Of a DNA stretch of 64,000 nt, positions 45,424 to 63,761 are shown piece after piece. The notes under the pieces are model-generated. The model was not told where the DNA came from, made no database searches, and saw only the letters and a list, made by a program, of their open reading frames with translations. The translations under genes and the position numbers were made by a program. The DNA is from Salpingoeca rosetta (lineage: Eukaryota; Protista; Choanoflagellata), in NCBI GenBank assembly GCA_033442325.1, contig JAWQFM010000029.1, forward strand, positions 1 through 64,000, given 5' to 3'. Positions within the stretch are counted from its first letter, which is position 1, and each line of letters begins with the position of its first letter.

Positions 45424-51843
<6,420 letters not shown>

Positions 51844-52456: not shown

Positions 52457-55400
52457 ATGAGCAGCGCACCACAATCGCTGGTGTCGCTTTCGCACACGTC
52501 TTCTTCATCACGTCCTCGGCTTCGCTTCCTCTTGATCTTACTCTTCTCCGCTCTGCTTGGCTTTGCAACATTCACGCATGGCGCAGCTGGTATGAATGTG
52601 TGTTGTGTCTGTGTGTCTGTGTCTGTGTCTGTGTGTGTCTGTGTCTGTGTGTGCCTGTGTGTGGGGGGGGGCTTATATGTTTGTTTGTTTGTTTGTTTTG
52701 TGTGCGGCTGATTGTCGCAATGTCGTTTCGTGTGTTGTTCATGTTGGAGTGAACCCGCGGTGCATGATAGAAGAACTTCGTGGTTTATTTGTGGGCGCGT
52801 CACCGCACTCACACATGCTCACACGCTCTCACGCACGCTCACACGCTCACGCACACATACGATGTAACGCAATGCGTGCCTCTTCTATCGCGTTGCCGGT
52901 TTGATCGCCTGCACACATACACAGAGACCACAACAGGCTCAACCATTCAGCCAATCATCACCTTCCCACAGACGACGACACAACAGGAATGCATCCCCGC
53001 CCCTCAATACCTGATTGGTACGGCACAACAGACCTTCCGAACTGTTGTTGTTTTGGTTCGCCTTGATGGTGGCAAGCCTCGCCACATACACGCACGCTCA
53101 CACATCTACACTCACACACATCTACACTCATCCACACTCACACGCGCGCACTTTCTCCCTCCCTCGCTGTGTGATCTGGCACGCACAAAACGCCTTGAAG
53201 ATGTGGCCACCTGCAAGCAAATGTGCTCTGGATCCTACCAGAACGACGAAAGGACAATCTGCTGGGCCGGCTGTGATTGGTACAACGACGGCGGTGACGA
53301 GTACTGCAAATGTGCGTGCTCCCAAGGCGTTCCCCGCTCGGACCTGCAAAACCCCTGCGTCACAGGGTGTGGGTTTGCCGATGACACGAGCAAGGTGCTC
53401 CTCTGCCCAGCTAACGAGTTTGCACAAGTCGAAAACGACGGCTCCCAGTCGTGCACGCCCGTCACAGCTTGCAGCACAGCGACCGAGTACCAAGTCGTTG
53501 CTCCAACTGCGTCGTCAGACAGACAGTGCGCCGTCTTGTCCACGTGCAGCCCGAGCCAGTACGAAGTCACGGCCGCCACGGCCACTTCCGACCGTGAATG
53601 TCAAGATGTGAGCGTCTGCGACCGCCGAACCGAGTTTGAACAACAACCACCAACAACAACTTCGGACAGAGAGTGCGCAACCATCACCATCTGCGAAGCA
53701 GCTACGCAATATGAGACCAAGGCACCAACGTCAACCAGCGATCGCGAGTGTGCGCCGGTGACGATCTGCACGCGTGGAACGGAGTTTGAAGTAACACCGC
53801 CAACTGCAACGACGGATCGAGTGTGCCAGCTGATCACGCAGTGTGACCCCCAAAGCGAATACCAGACGGTCAGCCCCACGTTCAACTCGGACCGGGAGTG
53901 CGCAGCCCTTACGACCTGTTCTGTCGACACGGAATACGAGTCAACCCCTCCAACCGCAACGACAGACCGCACGTGCTCAAACCTGACCGTGTGCGGCGCA
54001 TCCCAGTTTGAGGCGCAGGCGGCAACAGCGACATCAGACAGGACCTGCCAAGACATCACCATCTGCCTCCGTGCAACCCAATACGAACAAGCCCCACCCA
54101 CGACCACCTCCGACCGTGAATGCCAAGATGTGAGCGTCTGCGACCGCCGAACTGAGTTTGAGCAACACGCACCAACAGCAACTTCGGACAGAGAGTGTGC
54201 AACCATCACCACCTGCAACGCAAGAACGGAATATGAGACCAAGGCACCAACGTCGACCACAGACCGTGAATGCACTACGCTGACCCCGTGTGTGCGGGGC
54301 GAAGAGTACCAGAGCGTTGGGCCAACTGCAACAAGCGACCGTGAATGCACCCCAATCACGCACTGCCATGTGCTGGGCAAGTACCAGACCATTCCAGCCA
54401 CATTCAGCACGGATGCAGTGTGCGCGAACCTCTCACGATGCGATGCAACAACCCAGTACGAGCTGGGAGCACCAACAGCAACGTCTGATCGAGTTTGTGA
54501 TGACCTCGCTTCTTGTAACATTGATCAGTACGAGACGGCAGCACCAACAGCCACGTCTGACCGCACCTGTGCCAACGTCACAGTGTGTGATGCAGCAACA
54601 GAGTACGAGACGGCAGCACCAACAGCAACGTCTGACCGCACCTGTGCAAACGTCAACACTTGCAGCATCGAGCAATACGAGACGGCAGCACCAACAGCAA
54701 CGTCTGACCGCACCTGTGCCAACGTCACAGCGTGTGATGCAGCAACACAGTACGAGACGGCAGCACCAACAGCAACGTCTGACCGCACCTGTGCCAACGT
54801 CACAGCGTGTGATGCAGCAGCAGAGTACGAGACGGCAGCACCAACAGCAACGTCTGACCGCACCTGTGCCAACGTCACAGTGTGTGATGCAGCAACACAG
54901 TACGAGACGGCAGCACCAACAGCAACGTCTGACCGCACCTGTGCCAACGTCACAGCGTGTGATGCAGCAGCAGAGTACGAGACGGTAGCACCAACAGCAA
55001 CGTCTGACAGAGCGTGCGCCAACGTCACAGCGTGTGATACAGCTACAGAGTACGAGACGGTAGCACCAACAGCAACGTCTGACCGCACCTGCGCAAACGT
55101 CACAGCGTGTGATGCAGCTACAGAGTACGAGACGGTAGCACCAACAGCAACGTCTGATCGCACCTGTGCCAACGTCACAGCGTGTGATGCAGCTACAGAG
55201 TACGAGACGGCAGCACCAACAGCAACGTCTGACCGCACGTGCGCCAACGTCACAGCGTGTGATACAGCAACACAGTACGAGATAGCAGCACCAACAGCCA
55301 CGTCTGATCGCACCTGTTCCAACGTCAACACTTGCAGCATCGAGCAATACGAGACGGCAGCACCAACAGCAACGTCTGACAGAGAGTGCGCCAATCTCAC

Positions 55401-58400
55401 TGTGTGCGATCCAGCCACGCAGTTCCAAGCGACTGCACCAACCTCCGTCTCCGATCGACAATGCGCAAATATCACTGCATGTGGCGCTGCAACACAGTAC
55501 GAGACTGCAGCAGCTACGCCAACATCCGATCGCACCTGTGCACGCTTGCTCCTGTGCGGCCCATCACAGTACGAGGTGCGTGCGCCAACACCAACGACAG
55601 ACCGCGTGTGCCAAACCGCCAACTTCACGTCCGTCGTCCACGCCACCGTAACTACGCAAACAGTAGCCTCAGGGCTGGCGCCTGCTGCCGCCCGCGTGCC
55701 TTTCTCTCAACCCGCCCTGCTCCCTGTCAGCGTTGCCGGCACAGGGCGCGCAGAGGTGGCTCTGCCCAACACAGACGTGGCCGCGTCGGCGACATACAGC
55801 CTTGCCGCCGTCGCTGCACTCAACATCACAGACGCCATCACAGCAACAGCAGACGTGTACCACGACAGCAGCAGCGTTGTAATTCACGCGCGTGTTGCAG
55901 ACGCCCTGGGTGACACCACCAACATCCTCCCCGGTACGCTCACCGCCGAGGTGGTGGCGGATGCACAGCTGACGACTGCCCTGACCACCGTTGGCAGCAC
56001 AGCACCCCACACCCTCACCTGCACCTGCGCCGTGCGGTCACAGACACACGGGCTGTGCCAGGCAACATGCAGCGTGCCTCAGGACTGGTTCACAGCACTG
56101 GCAGTCGGCACCACTGCGTCTGCCTCCATCGCTGTCCAGGCAAGCAGCACGGGCAGCGCAAGGGCATCCCCACGCCGCACCATCGCCGCTGTCACCGTGC
56201 ACGGCAGCAGCGCCGCTGTGACCCCGCCCACCAACGCCATTTTCCTGCGCCTGCCCGAGGCGCCTGTTGCGCCCGGCGACGCTGCGACTGTGCAGGTGGG
56301 CGCCCGCCTCTCCGCCTTCCCGCTCGGCGGCTTTGTGGTGAAGCTCGAGTGTGCAGACGCGGCCGGCAAGGCCACGTTTGGCGCCGTTGCCATTGACGAC
56401 ACCACCTGGAGCAGCTTCGCGGCCGGGGAGGGAACGTCGGCTGTCAGCATCGGCGCTGTGCTCGCTGAGGGAGCGGCGCAGGTGAGTGGCCAGGACGATG
56501 CAGCGGTCCTGTTCACAGTGGCACTGAACCTGGACGATGACGCCGCAACCACAGTCCAGACACTCCTCAACATCAACCTAACGGTGAGTGAGGTGCTCGA
56601 CAACGCCAACAACATCCGCACCACCGCCACCCGCACGTATGCTGTGGACTTTACGGGTCTCGCCTCCTCCGTGCTCTCCTCTGCAGGCCCGGTCACCGGC
56701 GCTGTCCGCATCCGCCCTGTGCGTGCTGTCGGCGCTGTGTCGTTTGTAAGCACCACGCCCCGCATCCTCAACACAGCACCGCTCACGGGCGTCAGCGACG
56801 CCGCCGCATTCAGCATCGACACGCGCCTCGTATTGTCGGACGGCCAGCTGGTGTCTACAGCTACATCTGCACTTGCCGCTACAACAACGGTGCAGCAGTG
56901 TGCTGTTGCGTCTGGGCCGCCGACACTGGTGTCGCTGGAGCAGGACTGCAGCGGTGGCGTGGTCTCCACGCTGGACACGAGTGGCGGCACGGCTGTTCTG
57001 GAGATCAGTACCACCACCACGCTGGGCAGGGCTGCTGCTGCAGTGCTCACGCGCCGTGTGCTGGTGGAGGTGTGGAGCCCACGACTGCCGTTGATGGTGG
57101 CCACCGCGCCAAGCGTGCTTCGGCCCATTGCTGGGTGGCGTGAGCCTGCGGCCAACAGCGCCAACTCCTCCACATGTGATGCCCCGCGCTGGCAAACCCC
57201 GCATGTGCAGGTGACGGCGACATTTGCGTCCGGCGACCAAGAAGTGTCCGCTGTGGATGTCACCGGGCTTGTCGCTGCCGGCATCACCGCCAACGACACG
57301 ACCGTGCTTGCCGCCGCTAATGAGGATGAAGTCGGTGTGGCAGCGCTGCGGCCTCTTCGGGCACTGCGGAGCGGCGCTGTGCGTGTTATGGTCGTGCGTG
57401 CTGGGGACGGCATTGGCTCAGGCACCGTACTGGGCGAGGCAGCTCAGGCGACTGTAGTCGTGGATCCGGCAACGACGCCTGATGCGTACATCGGATGGCA
57501 GGGCATTGATGCCGTGGCCGTGAGCAATGTGGACCTAAGGCCCGTAAGTGGTAGTGACCCAGCCGGGGCAGGCTGGCTCGACGCAGTTGTGTTTGAGGTG
57601 GCGGTGGCCACGCACGCGCTGCGGGCAGAGGGTGCGTCCACTGCGCTCCTTGCGAGTCTCGTGCTGGAGGATGGGTGGCGGGAGCCGCTGGTGCCGGCCC
57701 GCGACGTCCTCTTCACCAGCATGGCTGCAGACCAGATCACCATTGACGCGGGCAACAGAGCCACTGTTGCTGTCGGCGCGACGAGCGGGTCGCGGGAGCT
57801 GGTGGCGGCCCAGCTCACGTCCACGGCAGTCGACGCTGCAACGGGCAACAACGCCGCCTGCGTGCCTCGCGTGCGCGCAAACGTGACGCTCGACCTCGAC
57901 CTGCCGGCCCCGACAGGCGTGCGGGTGAGCGGTGTTGTTTCTCGCATCACGCCCGCAGGTGACGCCGCTGCGCTGGCCGGCATTGCAACTGGCTTCAGCA
58001 TTGGTGTGGCGGTTGCTTTTGAGGACGGCACGGAGCGGGATATGACGACAGATGGGCGTGTGACAGCAACGGTGGCCCCGTCTGCTGCTGGTGCTACTGT
58101 AGAGCGGGGAGCCAACGGCGCGCTTCGCGTGGAGGCCATTGCCGCAGCACCAAACTCGCCGTCCATATCGCTGGTGACAGTGGCTTTTGATGGCGGTAAC
58201 GGACCCGCGTCCGTCGTCAACACCACGTTCCAGGTGCTGACAGTCAAATACACGGCCCTCCGCACAACGGCACGCCCCTTTCCAGCGTACGCGGGATCGC
58301 AGAGCGTCAGCGTGACTGAGCTTGCTCCCATCAACGGCACGGCTCCGCTTCAGTACCAGCGCGCACAGCTGGCGACAGCCATGATGCTGGACGATGGCAG

Positions 58401-61400
58401 TGAGCTTGCGCTTGATGCCGGTGACGTGGTGTATGCGGTGCGCCGTGCAGATGACGATGACAGTGCAGCACAACTGCTGCAGGGCGCAGTGGTGGAGCCA
58501 TCAACGCCAGGAAACATCACCGTGCTCGCAACGGCATTTGGATCATTTGAAGAGAGCCCTCGCTTTGGCCTGAGCGTGGTCGACGATGCAGTGCACGTGG
58601 TTGCGCTCCGCTCCCTCAGCACCACCTCTGGTATCGCGTTGACTTCACAGCAGGGGCAGACTGCAGGCTTTGCTGTCTGTGCGGCGGAGCTTAGCGATGG
58701 CACGCAGCTGCCACAGCTGTACTCCAACGGCCGTGCCCAGTATCCGAGTCTCATTCAACTGTCGGTGTCTGACGCAGATGTGCTGCGCATCAACAGCACC
58801 ACGGGGGAAGTTGTGCTGCTTGCCAACAGCCCAGGCGTGCTGCAGATTGTCGCACAGGTCACGTCGGCGCCCTCTGTTGTGACCACGACCGACGTGTCGT
58901 GCAACCTCCAGCCTGCGCTCGGCGACGTGGACGTCGGCCAGATGTCTGGTGTACCGGTCCCTGGCCCGCTGTCCATCGGCGACGAGCTGCAGGTGCAAGT
59001 GCGCGTCAACACAGGGAGCACGGACATTGGCTCGTTTACCATGGAGCTGCAGTATGATGCTTCTATTGTGTCGTTTGTTGGCGCTGATGCGACGTTTGGG
59101 GGAAGCCTGGAGGCCACGGACGATGGCCAGGGCTCGTTGCGTCTCGGTGGTGTTGTGTCTTCGAGCGGCGTTGGCGGGAGCGCTGCTGCCATTGCTCACG
59201 TTACGTTCCAGGCCGTCAGCGCTGGCGCGTTTGTGGTTGAGGGCGCGGTGACGGACTTGTTGGACCGCCAGCTTCCATCGCAACCGATTGTGGCGGGCCT
59301 GCCGTCTGCGGTTGTTGCTGGACGCGTGTGGATTTCGGTCACCGGTGCCGACGGTGGAGAGCAGCAGAGACGAAGGCGTTCGGGGGTGCGGCTGCCGGTA
59401 CCACCACCCCAGTCCCTGGCGCAGCCACGGCGGCGGCGCAACGCAGACAGCGACCCGTTTGCAAGTGCAGCGGACGTGGACGGCGATGGGCGGTTCACAA
59501 TTGGAGACGCGTTCTTCACGCTGCGGTATGTGGTGCTGGAGACGCAAGAGTTTGCCGGGGCGGACGGAGCGGCGGTGCAGGCCATTCTGGCCGAGGACCC
59601 CCGGCGACGCAGCGCACTCGACGCAGACCGGGACGGCACTGTGCGTCTGCGCGACAGCAGGCTGCAGAGCCAAGTAGCCACTGGCAAAGCGGTGTTCCTC
59701 GGCAGCATCCCAGGCGTGGACGTTGCCGTAAACCAAGACACGTCAGCATGTGGCGTTTCCGTGAGCGCAACTGTGTTTGAGCCTGGCCTTGGCGGAGCTG
59801 CTGCCTCCTCGACACGGGTGTTTGTGTTGGTTGATGGGCTTGCGCAAGACGGGGGCACAACCGCCACCCTGCTATCGCTGCCTGGCACTGGCACTGGCAT
59901 TGATGTGGCACAGCTGTCACCGGCTCTGTCCGACGCTGTCGCTGTGTACGGCAGCGAGCCTGGGGCGCAGGCTGTGCTGCTCGAGGCTGTGCCATCAAAT
60001 GCAAGTGCACCCGTGAGCGCTGTGTACACGGCTCTCTTGCCACCTGCTGTGGATACGCAGCTCATTGGCGTGTCGGTGTTTGCGGTTGTGTCACGTGGTG
60101 TGCGGACGTACGCAACGTTCTTCGGCAACCAGGCAACGACGGGTGCGCCTGTCGTGCCCTCAAGGCGCACCGAGACTGTGCGCGCATTTGCCAACGCAGA
60201 CGTGGACGCCGCAGTCCTAGATACGGGGCTTGATTCTGGCTACAACCCCCTCACCACCGCAGCCCTCAACAACACGCGCGCGCAGCAGTATTGTATCCGA
60301 CAATGCGTGGCCACGGGCGACGATGTCGTGTCTGCCTACTTTTACAACACGACCGCGTTCACGTGTGTTTCCACCAGCACATGCGACACGCTGAGTGAGT
60401 ACGAAAGTGAGCCAGCAACGAGCACAAGCAACAGAGAATGTGAGCCGCTGAGAGCTTGTGACGCAGCAACAGAGTACGAGACGGCAGCACCAACAGCAAC
60501 GTCTGATCGCACCTGTGCCAACGTCACAGCGTGTGATGCAGCTACAGAGTACGAGACGGCAGCACCAACAGCAACGTCTGATCGCACCTGTGCCAACGTC
60601 ACAGCTTGTGACGCAGCAACAGAGTACGAGACGGCAGCACCAACAGCAACGTCTGATCGCACCTGTGCCAACGTCACAGCGTGTGATGCAGCTACAGAGT
60701 ACGAGACGGAAGCACCAACAGCAACGTCTGACCGCACCTGTGCCAACGTCACAGCGTGTGACGCAGCAACAGAGTACGAGACGGCAGCACCAACAGCAAC
60801 GTCTGATCGCACCTGTGCCAACGTCACAGCGTGTGATGCAGCTACAGAGTACGAGACGGAAGCACCAACAGCAACGTCTGACCGCACCTGTTCCAACGTC
60901 AACACTTGCAGCATCGAGCAATACGAGACGGCAGCACCAACAGCAACGTCTGACCGCACCTGTGCCAACGTCACGTCTTGTGCAGGTGACCAGTACGAGA
61001 TAGCAGCACCAACAGCAACGTCTGACCGCACGTGCGCCAACGTCACAGCGTGTGATGCAGCAACAGAGTACGAGACGGCAGCACCAACAGCAACGTCTGA
61101 CCGCACGTGCGCCAACGTCACAGCGTGTGATACAGCAACACAGTACGAGATAGCAGCACCAACAGCCACGTCTGATCGCACCTGTTCCAACGTCAACACT
61201 TGCAGCATCGAGCAATACGAGACGGCAGCACCAACAGCCACGTCTGACAGAGAGTGCGCCAATCTCACTGTGTGCGATCCAGTCACGCAGTTCCAAGCAA
61301 CTGCACCAACAGCCACATCCGACAGGCTTTGCGCGAACTTGACTTCTAGTTCAACTCAGAGTCCAACAGCAGCTGCTGCTATTGCTTCTGTTCAAATTCC

Positions 61401-62922
61401 GGAAGCATCAAACCTTGGGCTAGCTGTGTCTGTGCTTGGCGCCCTTGTGTGTTGTTTTGGTTTGGTTCGGACGGTTCGTACACCAGTGTGGCCACTGTTT
61501 CTTTCACTCGCTCTGTGCCACGTGTACTTCGGCGTTGAGTCCGTTGCACTGTCCGACGACATTTCGTTTTCTCTTGTTGCGGACCGGTGCCTCGCCCTCG
61601 GCGCTTTCAAGCTTGCGCTTTCATTGAGTTGTCTCTGGTAAGATTGCTGATGGGATGATGTGTCCAGTTCACCTTGTGCCTGCATTTGATTCGCTATGTG
61701 TTACTCACTTTCTCCACTTGCTTCTTTCGCTAGCTGGCTTGGTGCATGCGTCCTTCAGTCGTCCACCGACATCAATCCTTTCACGTTGCGTCCTCTCGGG
61801 CTCTTTGCCATCGTCTGCGGTCAGTGCGCTCCTAGTGCAGCTTTGAGTGTTTGTTCCAAGCAGTGTAGAGCCTAGGTCCACGCGCCTGCTGTACTCACCA
61901 ACATTACTTTGCTATCCGCCTACAGCCATTCCAATCACAACTGCTGTTGCCCTCGTCGCTGCCGCGCCGTCCTCATTTGGAGCGTCGACCGGCTGGTAAG
62001 TGTATTGGAGGTGTTGCACCACATGAAACGATCAACTGCGCGTGGGTGTGGGCCGTCGCTGTGCCAACTTTACTCACACCAGGTACGCCTTGCTCGCTTC
62101 GCTTTTGACAGGTGTGACCTCCATCAACCGCTAGCACGAGGCCTCGCTGGTATTCTGGCGTCCTGTACTCTGGGCTTTTCCCCGCTGATTTACGCGAGCA
62201 TACGACGCATCCGTCACCGCCGCCAGTTCTTCATGGGCGACATTGTTGATGATTTGTTTGGGAACGAGTCTCGCATCCAGCGGCCGTTGCTGGCTGCTGC
62301 CATCCTCCTCGTTGTCGCCAACCGCGTCTCACTCAACCTTCCAGTGCATCTGAGTGTGGATGACGATATTCCAGAGCACATGCCAGTGGTGAACGTCATG
62401 TGTGCGGTTGCGTTGACGGCGGTGTCCCTGGTCTTCTTGTGCACGCGTCTTGGTCGATCAGATAACAACGGCAGCAACAAGGGCGGTCTTGCTGGATATG
62501 CTTCACCCAACAACAGTGGAGACCCATCCAAATTCGTTCATTTGAACACCATGCCTGCAGATGATGTTCCACGCAGCTTTGTCAGCCGCATTAGCAAACG
62601 AGGCGCGTTCTCGCCTTCAACACCCGCTCACCTACCAGGCAGCATCAGCAGGAGCATGCTGACTTCCTTCCGTTATCTTCCACGGTACGAAAATGACAGC
62701 AGTTCTGACGATGTGTCAGGCATGAGTATCTCGGACAAAGTGCACGAGGACGTCAGTGGCATTCACGAGGATACATCTTCCTCTTCGATTCTAAGAGGTT
62801 TGACGTCACTGGACATTAGCGATGGGGGGGAATCGATCGACTTGTTCCCAGTTGCAATCGATCGACAGGAGGTTGAGAACGCCGATGTGGAAAGTATTGA
62901 GGACAATGTTGTTGTGGTTTGA
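52457..62922 (+). CDS. Giant (~3209 aa) adhesion-GPCR-like receptor: signal peptide, Cys-rich repeats, TMEM132-like region, cohesin-like, RRRR x2, dockerin-like, Cys-rich repeats, 7TM, cytoplasmic tail (exons 52457-52589, 52925-53017, 53201-61637, 61734-61819, 61926-61995, 62112-62922)
   Basis: Six exons join in frame at GT-AG sites (9630 nt). Signal peptide RLRFLLILLFSALLGFATFTHG. Seven hydrophobic segments appear after splicing, with Cys at the top of TM3 (DRC) and in ECL2 (GWC). Domain motifs are detailed in findings. Confidence 0.85.
53452..55617 (+). repeat. ~75-bp coding tandem array 1 (~29 units, C..V..C....EYE.APTATSDR.C)
   Basis: Recurrent gagtacgagacggcagcaccaacagcaacgtctgaccgcacctgtgccaacgtcacag; near-identical units at 54530-55390. 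Confidence 0.95.
60361..61340 (+). repeat. ~75-bp coding tandem array 2 (~13 units, same consensus as array 1)
   Basis: Same unit sequence, immediately upstream of TM1. Confidence 0.95.
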
Positions 62923-63761
62923 ATGCTTTGCGGTGACGTTTTTGAAGATCACGAGTGTGTACTGGTGTGCTTTCTGAATTGTAACGTGCGCTGTGTTACC
63001 TTCTAATAAATATGACCTTGTTTTCAGTTGACTGACACGCATGACAGACATGCTACAACGAAATTTCTTCCAAATTCATAAAACCAAAGCAAGCAAAACC
63101 AATGCAGAACCGCTTGAATGTTGAATGTTACGAGGACAGCCAGTGTTCCTGCATTGACTCACTGTGTGTGATGGCACTCAATGATTTCTAAGATCCAGCA
63201 TGTTGTAGACAGGGTAGAGTGCATCACATGGAATTCACTGCCATTCTGCTAAAACACGGTGTGTGTGTGTGTGTTTTACTGTAGGCAAACGCAACAAACA
63301 AGAACACAAGGAGAATGAACAAGCACAACAAGCTGCCGCCAAATCAACTCGGGCAGCATGCTCAAACAAACACAAGACTAGTGCACACACAGTCAATGGC
63401 GCTGCCAAGGCGACATGGGCAGCGTGTGCACGAACACAAACAATCTAAACAATGAGCAGCATGCATACATGCGCGCAGAGCAATGCTAGGCATGGCATGA
63501 ATGCTTGCAGGCAAGCATACACAACAGACAACACTTCACAACACTGCATGGTACGCACACATAGCATTTGCCAAACATGGCGAGCATGCACACACACACA
63601 CATGGCACACAACTCACGTGTGTAGGGGAAGGAGGAGAGGAGAGGCAGTTGGCACACATGCATGCCAGCAGAGTGGAAGGAATGTTTGCCAACGGAAAAA
63701 CCACAAAGCAGGTGTTGTTGGCAAACAAGACAAAACCACATGAGAAGGCAAATTAGGAAGG

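What the first reader, a model, noticed from the sequence alone, without database searches (positions are those of the whole stretch)
58960..62922. GAIN-less adhesion-GPCR-like receptor with a cohesin / RRRR / dockerin clasp: a possible alternative cleave-and-hold mechanism
Seen: a cohesin-like domain at ~58960-59345 (SIGDELQVQVRVNTGSTDIGSFTMELQYDASIVSFV...LRLGGV...IAHVTFQAVSAG). Two polybasic sites follow, QQRRRRS (59368-59379) and PRRRRN (59428-59439). Then a dockerin-like domain with two Ca-loop/helix repeats (ADVDGDGRFTIGDAFFTLRYV; DADRDGTVRLRDSRL; ~59470-59690). Splicing three further exons (split or missing in the ORF track) yields seven TM segments: GLAVSVLGALVCC, LFLSLALCHVYF, C..LG.F.LALSLSCLCWL, AIPITTAVAL..FG..WC, TM5-7. 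Only ~25 residues separate the last Cys repeat from TM1, leaving no room for a GAIN/GPS domain. The tail ends in VVVV, a possible PDZ ligand. Known: cohesin-dockerin pairs are the Ca-dependent, mechanically strong cellulosome coupling. R-X-R-R is the furin/kexin consensus. Adhesion GPCRs normally self-cleave in GAIN and stay non-covalently joined. Inference: convertase cleavage would leave a ~2,300-aa N-terminal fragment held on the 7TM fragment by its own cohesin-dockerin bond. That would be a Ca/force-sensitive or partner-exchangeable analogue of GAIN or the Notch heterodimer. It could also allow trans cell-cell bridging.
Basis: partly seen in the sequence, partly recalled or inferred. Interest (0 to 1): 0.92.

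Follow-up and report, generated by a model that had tools for sequence, protein, structure and literature searches.

The report
Cohesin–dockerin clasp in choanoflagellate 7TM protein
A giant, expressed surface protein of the choanoflagellate Salpingoeca rosetta carries a cohesin and a dockerin that appear to bind each other. Two conserved protease sites lie between them, so the protein is probably cut and then held together by this clasp. The same module recurs in many adhesion proteins of the closest relatives of animals.

Summary
The gene is S. rosetta PTSG_09083 (3209 aa). RNA reads confirm all three proposed splice junctions, and the spliced C-terminus has seven helices with N-out/C-in charge topology.

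The cohesin is supported by Pfam, by a family profile against solved structures, and by fold search. The dockerin is supported at family-profile level, and both Ca loops are intact. No GAIN/GPS domain is present.

The cohesin, RxRR, variable linker, RxRR, dockerin unit is not special to this receptor. It is a conserved cassette. About 23 copies lie at about 17 loci in this genome, and 270 protein clusters carry it in public data. Hosts include cadherin-rich giant proteins from several choanoflagellate lineages.

- R-x-[KR]-R sites are about 75 times denser in the linker than in the rest of the same proteins.
- 92 of 114 linkers carry a site.
- Within a cassette, cohesin and dockerin covary at the predicted interface.
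- A complex test passed (0.65, best control 0.03).

Cleave-and-hold is therefore well supported in silico but not shown.

The label "adhesion-GPCR-like" is not supported. There is no 7tm_2 hit and only a weak in-register profile match. The clasp sits about 650 residues from TM1, so the mechanism resembles Notch or RPTP processing more than GAIN. The VVVV tail is not conserved. A possible Cys1802–Cys2085 staple (variant numbering) is unresolved.

The parts
52457..52588 (+). Exon 1: start codon and signal peptide of PTSG_09083
   Evidence: tblastn of the annotated protein P0159, residues 1-44, 100%
52924..53016 (+). Exon 2 (short, coordinates approximate)
   Evidence: Peptide of the annotated protein located in the window
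53188..61637 (+). Giant exon 3 encoding nearly the whole ectodomain and TM1 to mid-TM3
   Evidence: The last 3134 residues of P0159 are identical to the ORF-plus-spliced-exon model
53290..55600 (+). First array of about 26-aa TNFR-like cysteine repeats
   Evidence: Pfam TNFR_c6 E 9.8e-8, 32.7 bits, cut-off 29.4. 37 repeat motifs counted in the whole protein
56209..57444 (+). TMEM132/coherin-type region: a first cohesin-like stretch, then Ig_TMEM132_4th/5th-like domains
   Evidence: Weak Pfam hits, E 2e-4 and 0.013, below cut-off. The same families score strongly in paralog PTSG_03507 and the M. brevicollis homolog. The first cohesin-like stretch is a reading by eye only
58918..59346 (+). Cohesin domain of the cassette
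59368..59379 (+). Polybasic site 1 (RRRR, predicted convertase site; P0159 residues 2132-2135)
59380..59427 (+). Variable, low-confidence linker between the two sites (a 20-aa piece would be excised if both sites are cut)
   Evidence: Model pLDDT 59-79 and no secondary structure. Not conserved in the family
59428..59439 (+). Polybasic site 2 (RRRR; P0159 residues 2152-2155)
59464..59694 (+). Dockerin domain with two intact Ca loops (variant numbering: D1993/D1995/D1997/D2004 and D2042/D2044/D2046/D2053)
59695..60282 (+). Beta-rich domain after the dockerin, no family match; its start is conserved with the cassette
60283..61341 (+). Second array of TNFR-like cysteine repeats
61342..61401 (+). 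Short Ser/Thr/Ala stalk; no room for a GAIN/GPS domain
61402..62466 (+). Seven-helix membrane domain, interrupted by three introns (61638-61733, 61820-61925, 61996-62111)
   Evidence: The ortholog keeps the same exon structure at 38% identity
62467..62922 (+). Cytoplasmic tail (151 aa) ending in VVVV, plus stop codon; mRNA ends near 63020

Best explanation
PTSG_09083 is a real, transcribed gene. It encodes a giant surface protein with its N-terminus outside the cell.

Domain order: signal peptide; TNFR-like Cys repeats; a TMEM132/coherin-type Ig region; a cohesin-linker-dockerin cassette; a beta domain; more Cys repeats; a short stalk; an orphan seven-helix membrane domain; a 151-aa cytoplasmic tail.

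The cassette is a family-wide module of choanoflagellate giant adhesion proteins.

Most likely mechanism:
1. In the secretory pathway a furin/kexin-type convertase cuts at one or both conserved R-x-[KR]-R sites flanking the disordered linker (inferred).
2. This yields an N-terminal fragment of about 2,090 aa and a C-terminal fragment of about 1,050 aa.
3. The fragments stay joined because the cohesin at the end of the first binds, in a Ca-dependent way, the dockerin at the start of the second. The binding is supported in silico; the Ca dependence is inferred from the intact loops.

The joint is thus a specific, non-covalent link in an otherwise continuous ectodomain. What the seven-helix domain signals, if anything, is unknown.
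For: Gene and splicing.

Domain identities:
- Cohesin: Pfam 24.7 bits, family profile vs PDB cohesin 2xdh E 5e-7, Foldseek E 3.9e-8.
- Dockerin: family profile vs PDB dockerin 4fl4_A E 3e-7. The invariant Asp columns are loop positions 1 and 12 of the first Ca loop and position 12 of the second; position 1 of the second is nearly invariant.

The cassette is a unit:
- 270 clusters hit at E<=1e-3, and 120 of 231 domain hits span both domains.
- 25 matches at about 17 loci in this genome.
- Hosts include a protein with 13 or more cadherin domains plus TMEM132 Ig domains, M. brevicollis A9V5X7, S. urceolata and an acanthoecid.

Cleavage sites:
- 92 of 114 linkers carry R-x-[KR]-R, against a mean of 13.8 (maximum 23) in composition-preserving shuffles.
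- 50 linkers carry two or more separate sites.
- Density is 2.26 per 100 aa in linkers against 0.030 in the rest of the same proteins.
- The first site has a strong positional mode, 10-12 residues into the measured linker window in 58 of 92 linkers. The last site's distance to the dockerin is more variable (median 21; 8-55).
- This protein has no other ectodomain R-x-[KR]-R.
- The ortholog keeps both sites with an unrelated linker.
- Four P_proprotein loci lie in the genome.

Holding:
- The single-chain AF2 model has pLDDT 88.9 and pTM 0.85, with only the linker at low confidence.
- Complex test: score 0.65, best of 3 controls 0.03. This mark was reached by 51 of 78 solved complexes and 2 of 108 mismatched pairs. 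Runs agree in at least 96% of contacts, and partner pLDDT is at least 64.
- Within-cassette covariation concentrates at the predicted interface. The top three inter-domain pairs are all interface pairs. 14 of the top 50 are interface pairs against 2.4 expected. Excess MI is 0.128 against 0.047, and the entropy-matched difference is 0.066.
Against: - No protein-level data: cleavage, Ca dependence and binding are all unmeasured.
- The complex pass may reflect the model's memory of solved cohesin-dockerin complexes (caveat stated).
- The covariation p-values treat related cassettes and overlapping pairs as independent, so only the effect size and ranking should be trusted.
- 22 of 114 cassettes lack a strict R-x-[KR]-R.
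- In this protein and its ortholog the only cysteines near the cassette sit just before the cohesin (C1802) and just after the dockerin (C2085). If they pair, the cut halves would be covalently linked.
- Family-wide the two Cys are not co-inherited (64 both, 37 second only, 9 first only). Their flanks do not covary. The question is therefore open.
- This copy's Dockerin_1 score is below Pfam's cut-off.
Confidence: 0.6

Rival explanations
1. Cut, but the clasp works between molecules. After cleavage the dockerin on the membrane-bound fragment and the cohesin on the released fragment exchange partners with other copies or other cassette-bearing proteins. This would build chains or cell-cell and cell-matrix links, a cellulosome-like assembly system rather than a self-clasp.
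For: About 23 cassettes at about 17 loci in one genome offer many potential partners. Interface residues are no more conserved than the rest of the domains, as expected if specificity varies. The protein may also carry a first, TMEM132-type cohesin-like stretch, seen by eye only (no Pfam hit), whose partner is unknown.
Against: Covariation is measured between the two domains of the same cassette and peaks at the interface. That is what own-partner binding predicts. The single-chain model packs the two domains with pTM 0.85. Swapping between identical molecules would give the same covariation and is not excluded.
Confidence: 0.15
2. Not cut. The cassette is a closed intramolecular latch, and the basic motifs serve another role such as binding sulfated glycans. 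The latch would open under tension and release the 45-90-residue linker as slack, a mechanical shock absorber.
For: The linker is long enough for cis binding without cleavage. 22 of 114 cassettes lack a strict furin motif.
Against: There are two separate R-x-[KR]-R sites. The first has a strong positional mode and the second lies shortly before the dockerin, flanking a sequence-unconstrained spacer. Enrichment is 75-fold over the rest of the same secreted proteins. This is the signature of convertase processing, and convertases are present.
Confidence: 0.15
3. Cut, but held covalently. Cys1802 before the cohesin and Cys2085 after the dockerin form a disulfide, so processing gives a two-chain disulfide-linked protein like the insulin or Met receptors. 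The cohesin-dockerin contact would be only a folding scaffold.
For: These are the only two cysteines within the cassette in this protein. In the ortholog they are the only ones within about 370 residues upstream and 190 downstream. Both columns are common in the family.
Against: The two Cys occur independently across the family (64 both, 37 second only, 9 first only; about 66 both expected under independence). Covariation between their flanking segments is at background level.
Confidence: 0.1

Closest known systems
Bacterial cellulosome type I cohesin-dockerin pairs (e.g. PDB 1ohz, 4fl4, 2ccl)
   Same: Same two folds by profile and structure. Two EF-hand-like Ca loops. The predicted contact uses dockerin helices 1 and 3.
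   Different: Here both partners are in one eukaryotic polypeptide, adjacent, with conserved convertase sites between them. The context is cell-surface adhesion proteins, not enzyme scaffolds.
Coherin/lefftyrin/hedgling cadherins and the TMEM132 module (Nichols 2012 and Sanchez-Pulido & Ponting 2017, PMC6030884)
   Same: Cohesin domains in choanoflagellate and sponge cadherins and the TMEM132 CR-cohesin-BIG module are already described. Proteins carrying the cassette have cadherin and TMEM132 Ig domains.
   Different: That paper treats the cohesin that precedes the BIG domains and names no dockerin partner in these proteins; it states only that dockerin homologues are not detectable in vertebrates. 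The cassette here is a second cohesin, downstream, paired with a dockerin and dibasic sites. I found no paper describing it in the searchable library. The Nichols and Peer papers were not readable.
Notch S1 processing, and furin-cleaved non-covalent heterodimers such as LAR-type RPTPs and FAT cadherins (my own knowledge)
   Same: A convertase cuts an exposed ectodomain loop, and the halves stay associated non-covalently. In Notch the association depends on Ca.
   Different: The holding domains are unrelated (HD/LNR or Ig/FN3 against cohesin-dockerin). No evidence of regulated release here.
Adhesion GPCR GAIN domain
   Same: A large adhesive ectodomain on a seven-helix domain, predicted to be split into two associated fragments.
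   Different: No GAIN/GPS. The cut would be enzymatic, not autoproteolytic. The cut site is about 650 residues from TM1, so no tethered agonist is exposed. The 7TM is not a 7tm_2 member.
Small bacterial and archaeal proteins carrying both a cohesin and a dockerin
   Same: Cohesin and dockerin in one chain. Atlas clusters of about 220-aa 'Cohesin/Dockerin' proteins are the nearest feature neighbours.
   Different: No convertase sites. Prokaryotic, and the roles are mostly unknown.

Membership tests
Cohesin (Pfam PF00963) | Sequence match to the family model above the curated cut-off | tested here: met
   24.7 bits against 24.1 when the domain is scanned alone. Only 18.8 in the whole-ORF scan. 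Paralog PTSG_03507 scores 35.5. Family profile vs PDB cohesins E 5e-7.
Cohesin (Pfam PF00963) | Beta-sandwich fold like solved cohesins | tested here: met
   AF2 model pLDDT above 94 over the domain. The top 29 Foldseek hits are all cohesin modules; best E 3.9e-8, prob 1.0, TM by target up to 0.73.
Dockerin type I (Pfam PF00404) | Sequence match above the curated cut-off | tested here: inconclusive
   This copy scores 20.0 bits, cut-off 22.9. The M. brevicollis cassette scores 32.1; the 46.6-bit Dockerin_1 hit in P0021 lies at residues 584-637, outside its cassette. Family profile vs PDB dockerins E 3e-7.
Dockerin type I (Pfam PF00404) | Two Ca-binding loops (Asp/Asn at positions 1, 3, 5, 12), each followed by a helix | tested here: met
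   D1993/D1995/D1997/D2004 and D2042/D2044/D2046/D2053. Three of these columns are invariant in 111 cassettes. Helices follow each loop in the model.
Cohesin-dockerin complex | The two domains bind each other | tested here: inconclusive
   In silico only. Complex score 0.65 against best control 0.03. Interface covariation. No measurement.
Adhesion GPCR (class B2) | 7tm_2-type seven-helix domain | tested here: not met
   No Pfam hit at E<=10 on the spliced domain. A genome-wide PF00002 scan finds other loci but not this one. Only a weak in-register hhalign match over TM3-TM5: prob 42%, falling to 12% with the ortholog added; controls at most 2.2%.
Adhesion GPCR (class B2) | GAIN domain with GPS motif next to TM1 | tested here: not met
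   No GPS/GAIN hit at E<=1. Only about 30 residues lie between the last repeat Cys and TM1.
GPCR in the broad sense | Seven helices, N-terminus out, C-terminus in | tested here: met
   Seven helices in AF2 secondary structure, though pLDDT is 47. Basic residues mark the predicted inner loops and acidic residues the outer loops, in both species. Feature neighbours are GPCR clusters scoring 0.92-0.94 (a lead only).
GPCR in the broad sense | Couples to G proteins or arrestin | not testable with these tools
   No family assignment. No paralog in the genome. No sequence relatives beyond one ortholog.
Proprotein convertase substrate | R-x-K/R-R in an exposed segment of a secretory protein, conserved among relatives | tested here: met
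Proprotein convertase substrate | Actually cleaved | not testable with these tools
   Needs protein data. Convertase genes are present.
TMEM132/coherin module | Ig_TMEM132 domains above cut-off | tested here: inconclusive
   E 2e-4 and 0.013, both below cut-off in this protein. Clear in the paralog and in other cassette hosts.

The most novel reading that the evidence does not exclude
The cohesin / double convertase site / dockerin cassette is a previously undescribed, widely used 'cut-and-clasp' joint of holozoan surface proteins. The pieces would be held by pair-specific, Ca-dependent, mechanically strong cohesin-dockerin bonds. This would be an independent solution to the problem that animals solve with GAIN, SEA and the Notch heterodimerisation domain, and it could allow regulated shedding or partner exchange.
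Probability: 0.45. Interest if true: 0.85.

Novelty: new variant of a known kind. Interest (0 to 1): 0.78.

Why it matters

Cohesin domains in these proteins have been known since 2008-2012, but their partner and purpose have been open. The TMEM132 paper says it is unclear whether that cohesin mediates such a strong interaction.

The evidence here points to the partner being a dockerin a few dozen residues downstream in the same chain, with conserved processing sites between them. That gives a concrete, testable function for a module present about 23 times in one genome.

S. rosetta allows knock-in tagging and western analysis of receptor processing, so the idea can be tested directly. A eukaryotic, pair-specific cohesin-dockerin set could also serve as a protein-engineering toolkit.

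Tried and rejected
- Relatives of the 7TM: word-indexed searches with the last exon and with the whole spliced domain found nothing. A scan of the organism's own genome found no paralog. PDB sequence search gave only a chance hit.
- Folding the 7TM without an alignment gave pLDDT 47. Fold searches with that model were, as expected, not significant: best E 0.11 against PDB and TM at most 0.40 against the Atlas. I give them no weight. I note only that class B receptors dominate the non-significant PDB list.
- The idea that this gene is the published S. rosetta adhesion GPCR Cupidon is rejected. Cupidon is PTSG_03655 and has a GAIN domain.
- Whether the 2025 choanoflagellate GPCR catalogue includes PTSG_09083 could not be checked. 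No supplements are held, and the text does not mention cohesin, dockerin or TNFR.
- The Peer 2009 and Nichols 2012 papers could not be read. A prior mention of dockerins in these cadherins cannot be excluded.
- Interface residues are not more conserved than the rest of the domains. This led me to test covariation instead.
- VVVV as a conserved PDZ ligand is rejected as a family feature. The ortholog's tail ends differently.


Full report
**What the window is.** The window comes from a 55.4-Mb genome. The protein search identifies it as Salpingoeca rosetta. The finding lies in one gene, PTSG_09083. It is annotated as XP_004989885.1 (3209 aa, P0159) with a shorter variant XP_004989884.1 (3035 aa, P0001). 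NCBI calls both 'hypothetical protein', and UniRef calls them 'TNFR-Cys domain-containing protein'. Unless stated, residue numbers below are those of the variant P0001. Add 174 for P0159.

**Checking the observation.**
- RNA evidence is direct. In raw stranded RNA-seq reads the joints 61637/61734, 61819/61926 and 61995/62112 are seen 38, 37 and 52 times, all GT..AG.
- Transcript contigs from three other studies carry the same joints. The introns have zero depth. The message ends near 63020.
- The two RRRR runs are at 59368-59379 and 59428-59439.
- The tail ends in VVVV.
- The last repeat cysteine is about 30 residues from TM1. A whole-protein Pfam scan at E<=1 finds no GPS or GAIN.

**The cohesin and the dockerin are real.**
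- Scanned alone, the first domain passes Pfam's Cohesin cut-off (24.7 against 24.1 bits). The second falls short of Dockerin_1 (20.0 against 22.9).
- A search of 1.84 billion cluster representatives with the 287-residue stretch found 270 proteins at E<=1e-3. Most matches cover both domains.
- A profile of 111 such stretches (A1) hits solved cohesins with its first half (2xdh E 5e-7). It hits solved dockerins with its second half (4fl4_A E 3e-7).
- The AF2 model built on this alignment has pLDDT 88.9 and pTM 0.85, with a nine-strand sandwich and a helical dockerin. Only the linker between them is at low confidence.
- Its 29 best structural neighbours are all cohesin modules; the first non-cohesin entry is rank 30 (best E 3.9e-8, prob 1.0).
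- Both dockerin Ca loops have Asp at positions 1, 3, 5 and 12. Three of these columns are invariant across the family.

**The cassette is a family-wide module, not a feature of this receptor.**
- In S. rosetta the profile finds 25 matches at about 17 loci, many inside open frames of 6000-7500 codons and up to three per frame.
- Other hosts include M. brevicollis A9V5X7, S. rosetta PTSG_03507, S. urceolata and an acanthoecid.
- One 6131-aa host has at least 13 cadherin domains plus TMEM132-type Ig domains.
- This matches the 'coherin'-type cadherins and the TMEM132 module described in PMC6030884.
- That paper deals with the cohesin that precedes the BIG domains and names no dockerin partner in those proteins; its only statement on dockerins is that homologues are not detectable in vertebrates. 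The cassette here is a second cohesin further downstream, with its own dockerin.
- Two other first-stage notes on this genome flag the same cassette elsewhere, one in a receptor tyrosine phosphatase. My genome scan agrees in general, but I did not examine those loci.
- Most hosts have one or no C-terminal TM segment by a crude hydropathy count. The seven-helix ending is peculiar to PTSG_09083 and its ortholog.

**Evidence for cutting.**
- In the alignment the linker is unconserved in sequence and length, except for two basic motifs (consensus RR, then R.RR).
- Of 114 linkers, 92 contain R-x-[KR]-R and 50 contain two or more separate sites.
- Composition-preserving shuffles give a mean of 13.8 linkers with a site (maximum 23).
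- Site density is 2.26 per 100 residues in linkers, against 0.030 in the 241,639 other residues of the same proteins.
- The first site mostly begins 10-12 residues into the measured linker window (58 of 92 linkers). The last site's distance to the dockerin is more variable (median 21, range 8-55).
- PTSG_09083 has no other such motif in its ectodomain. The only other one is in a cytoplasmic loop.
- The ortholog keeps both sites around an unrelated spacer.
- The genome has four loci with the P domain of proprotein convertases.
- Two fixed convertase motifs flanking a free-running spacer is the pattern of an excised connecting peptide. This is inference. No protein data exist here.

**Evidence for holding.**
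- A two-chain test of the cohesin (1803-1957) against the dockerin (1982-2078) scored 0.65, with the best of three controls at 0.03.
- That mark was reached by 51 of 78 solved complexes and 2 of 108 mismatched pairs. Runs agree in at least 96% of contacts, and partner pLDDT is at least 64.
- The tool warns that a pass for a family with solved complexes may be memory.
- I therefore looked for independent evidence in the alignment. Mutual information between cohesin and dockerin columns of the same cassette is concentrated at the predicted interface.
- The three strongest inter-domain pairs (1884-2062, 1922-2003, 1920-2062) are all interface pairs. 14 of the top 50 are interface-by-interface, against 2.4 expected.
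- After subtracting a row-permuted baseline, excess information is 0.128 against 0.047. An entropy-matched comparison keeps a difference of 0.066.
- The p-values are inflated by relatedness, but the ranking is clear. Each cohesin seems to co-evolve with the dockerin next to it.

**A caveat on 'non-covalent'.** The only cysteines in this cassette are C1802, just before the cohesin, and C2085, just after the dockerin. In the ortholog the equivalent pair is isolated from other cysteines. A disulfide between them would tie the cut halves together covalently. Against this, the two columns vary independently in the family, and their flanks do not covary. I could not read distances from the model, so this stays open.

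**The seven-helix domain.**
- AF2 without an alignment gives seven helices but pLDDT 47.
- Loop charges fit N-out/C-in in both species.
- The ortholog lies on a metagenome contig. It has the same four-exon structure and 38% identity over the domain.
- No Pfam family matches at E<=10. The 7tm_2 model finds a dozen exon matches at other S. rosetta loci but not this one.
- There is no paralog and no other sequence relative.
- An hhalign comparison with S. rosetta's own 7tm_2 domains gives an in-register TM3-TM5 match. It aligns the TM3 Cys and Trp and places the outer-loop Cys one position out of register. Prob is 42% and score 34.7, above all 61 reversed or shuffled controls (at most 22.4).
- Adding the ortholog lowers the match to prob 12% and score 28.8.
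- Language-model neighbours are GPCR clusters.
- I read this as an orphan, GPCR-shaped domain, perhaps distantly related to the class B/cAMP-receptor group. It is not a member of the adhesion GPCR family.

The clasp idea survives and gains comparative support. The GAIN analogy is weaker. The cut would leave about 650 ectodomain residues (dockerin, beta domain, 13 Cys repeats, stalk) on the membrane fragment, so nothing like a tethered agonist is uncovered. The closest working analogies are Notch S1 processing and furin-cleaved receptor phosphatases and FAT cadherins (my own knowledge). The VVVV ending is not shared by the ortholog.

**Verdict.** The main result is a conserved cohesin / double convertase site / dockerin cassette in choanoflagellate surface proteins. 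I found no description of it in the searchable literature, though two key older papers were not readable.

Noticed in passing
window 61200-61260 (second Cys-repeat array): RNA reads and contigs from three runs show a 'goes back 48, with 24 other letters between' joint at 61247/61200. This is an extra in-frame 72-nt stretch relative to the assembly. There is also a C>A difference at 61239 in most reads. The repeat array is probably collapsed or polymorphic in copy number.
   Followed up: no
window 53200-55600: The two annotated isoforms differ by 174 residues inside the first Cys-repeat array (P0159 against P0001, diverging after residue 254). This may be alternative splicing within repeats or an annotation artefact.
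   Followed up: partly
window 53600-55650 and 60217-61316, minus strand: Long stop-free ORFs (300-370 aa) run antisense to the Cys-repeat arrays. They are by-products of the repeat composition, not genes. Stranded RNA reads over 61200-61316 lie almost only on the sense orientation; the rest of these stretches was not covered by reads.
   Followed up: partly
window 49700-51100: CA/TG microsatellite tracts flank a run of N (an assembly gap) just upstream of the gene.
   Followed up: no
window 62560-62640 (cytoplasmic tail): A basic motif after TM7 (R-S-F-x-x-R-x-x-x-R-G-x-F-x-P-x-T-P) is conserved between S. rosetta and the metagenomic ortholog, while the rest of the tail is not. It may be a docking or phosphorylation site.
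   Followed up: no
L014 (ENA ERZ27287569 contig k119_5885), 3403-10462: An uncultured relative carries the ortholog with the same architecture, but with only one or two Cys repeats before a longer Ser/Thr/Pro stalk. Repeat number is therefore evolutionarily labile.
   Followed up: partly
Alignment A1, columns just before the dockerin: Most cassettes (42 of 111 with 3+1 Cys, 29 with 1+1) have extra cysteines between site 2 and the first Ca loop, and a Cys inside the loop (GDC). PTSG_09083, its ortholog and a few others lack them (GDG). There are thus at least two cassette subtypes.
   Followed up: partly
G000 C7:2027054-2037739, C6:1969719-1980476, C4:1897831-1905834: Single open frames of 6100-7600 codons hold two or three cassettes spaced about 5 kb apart. 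If each is cut, these proteins would be chains of three or four clasped pieces.
   Followed up: no
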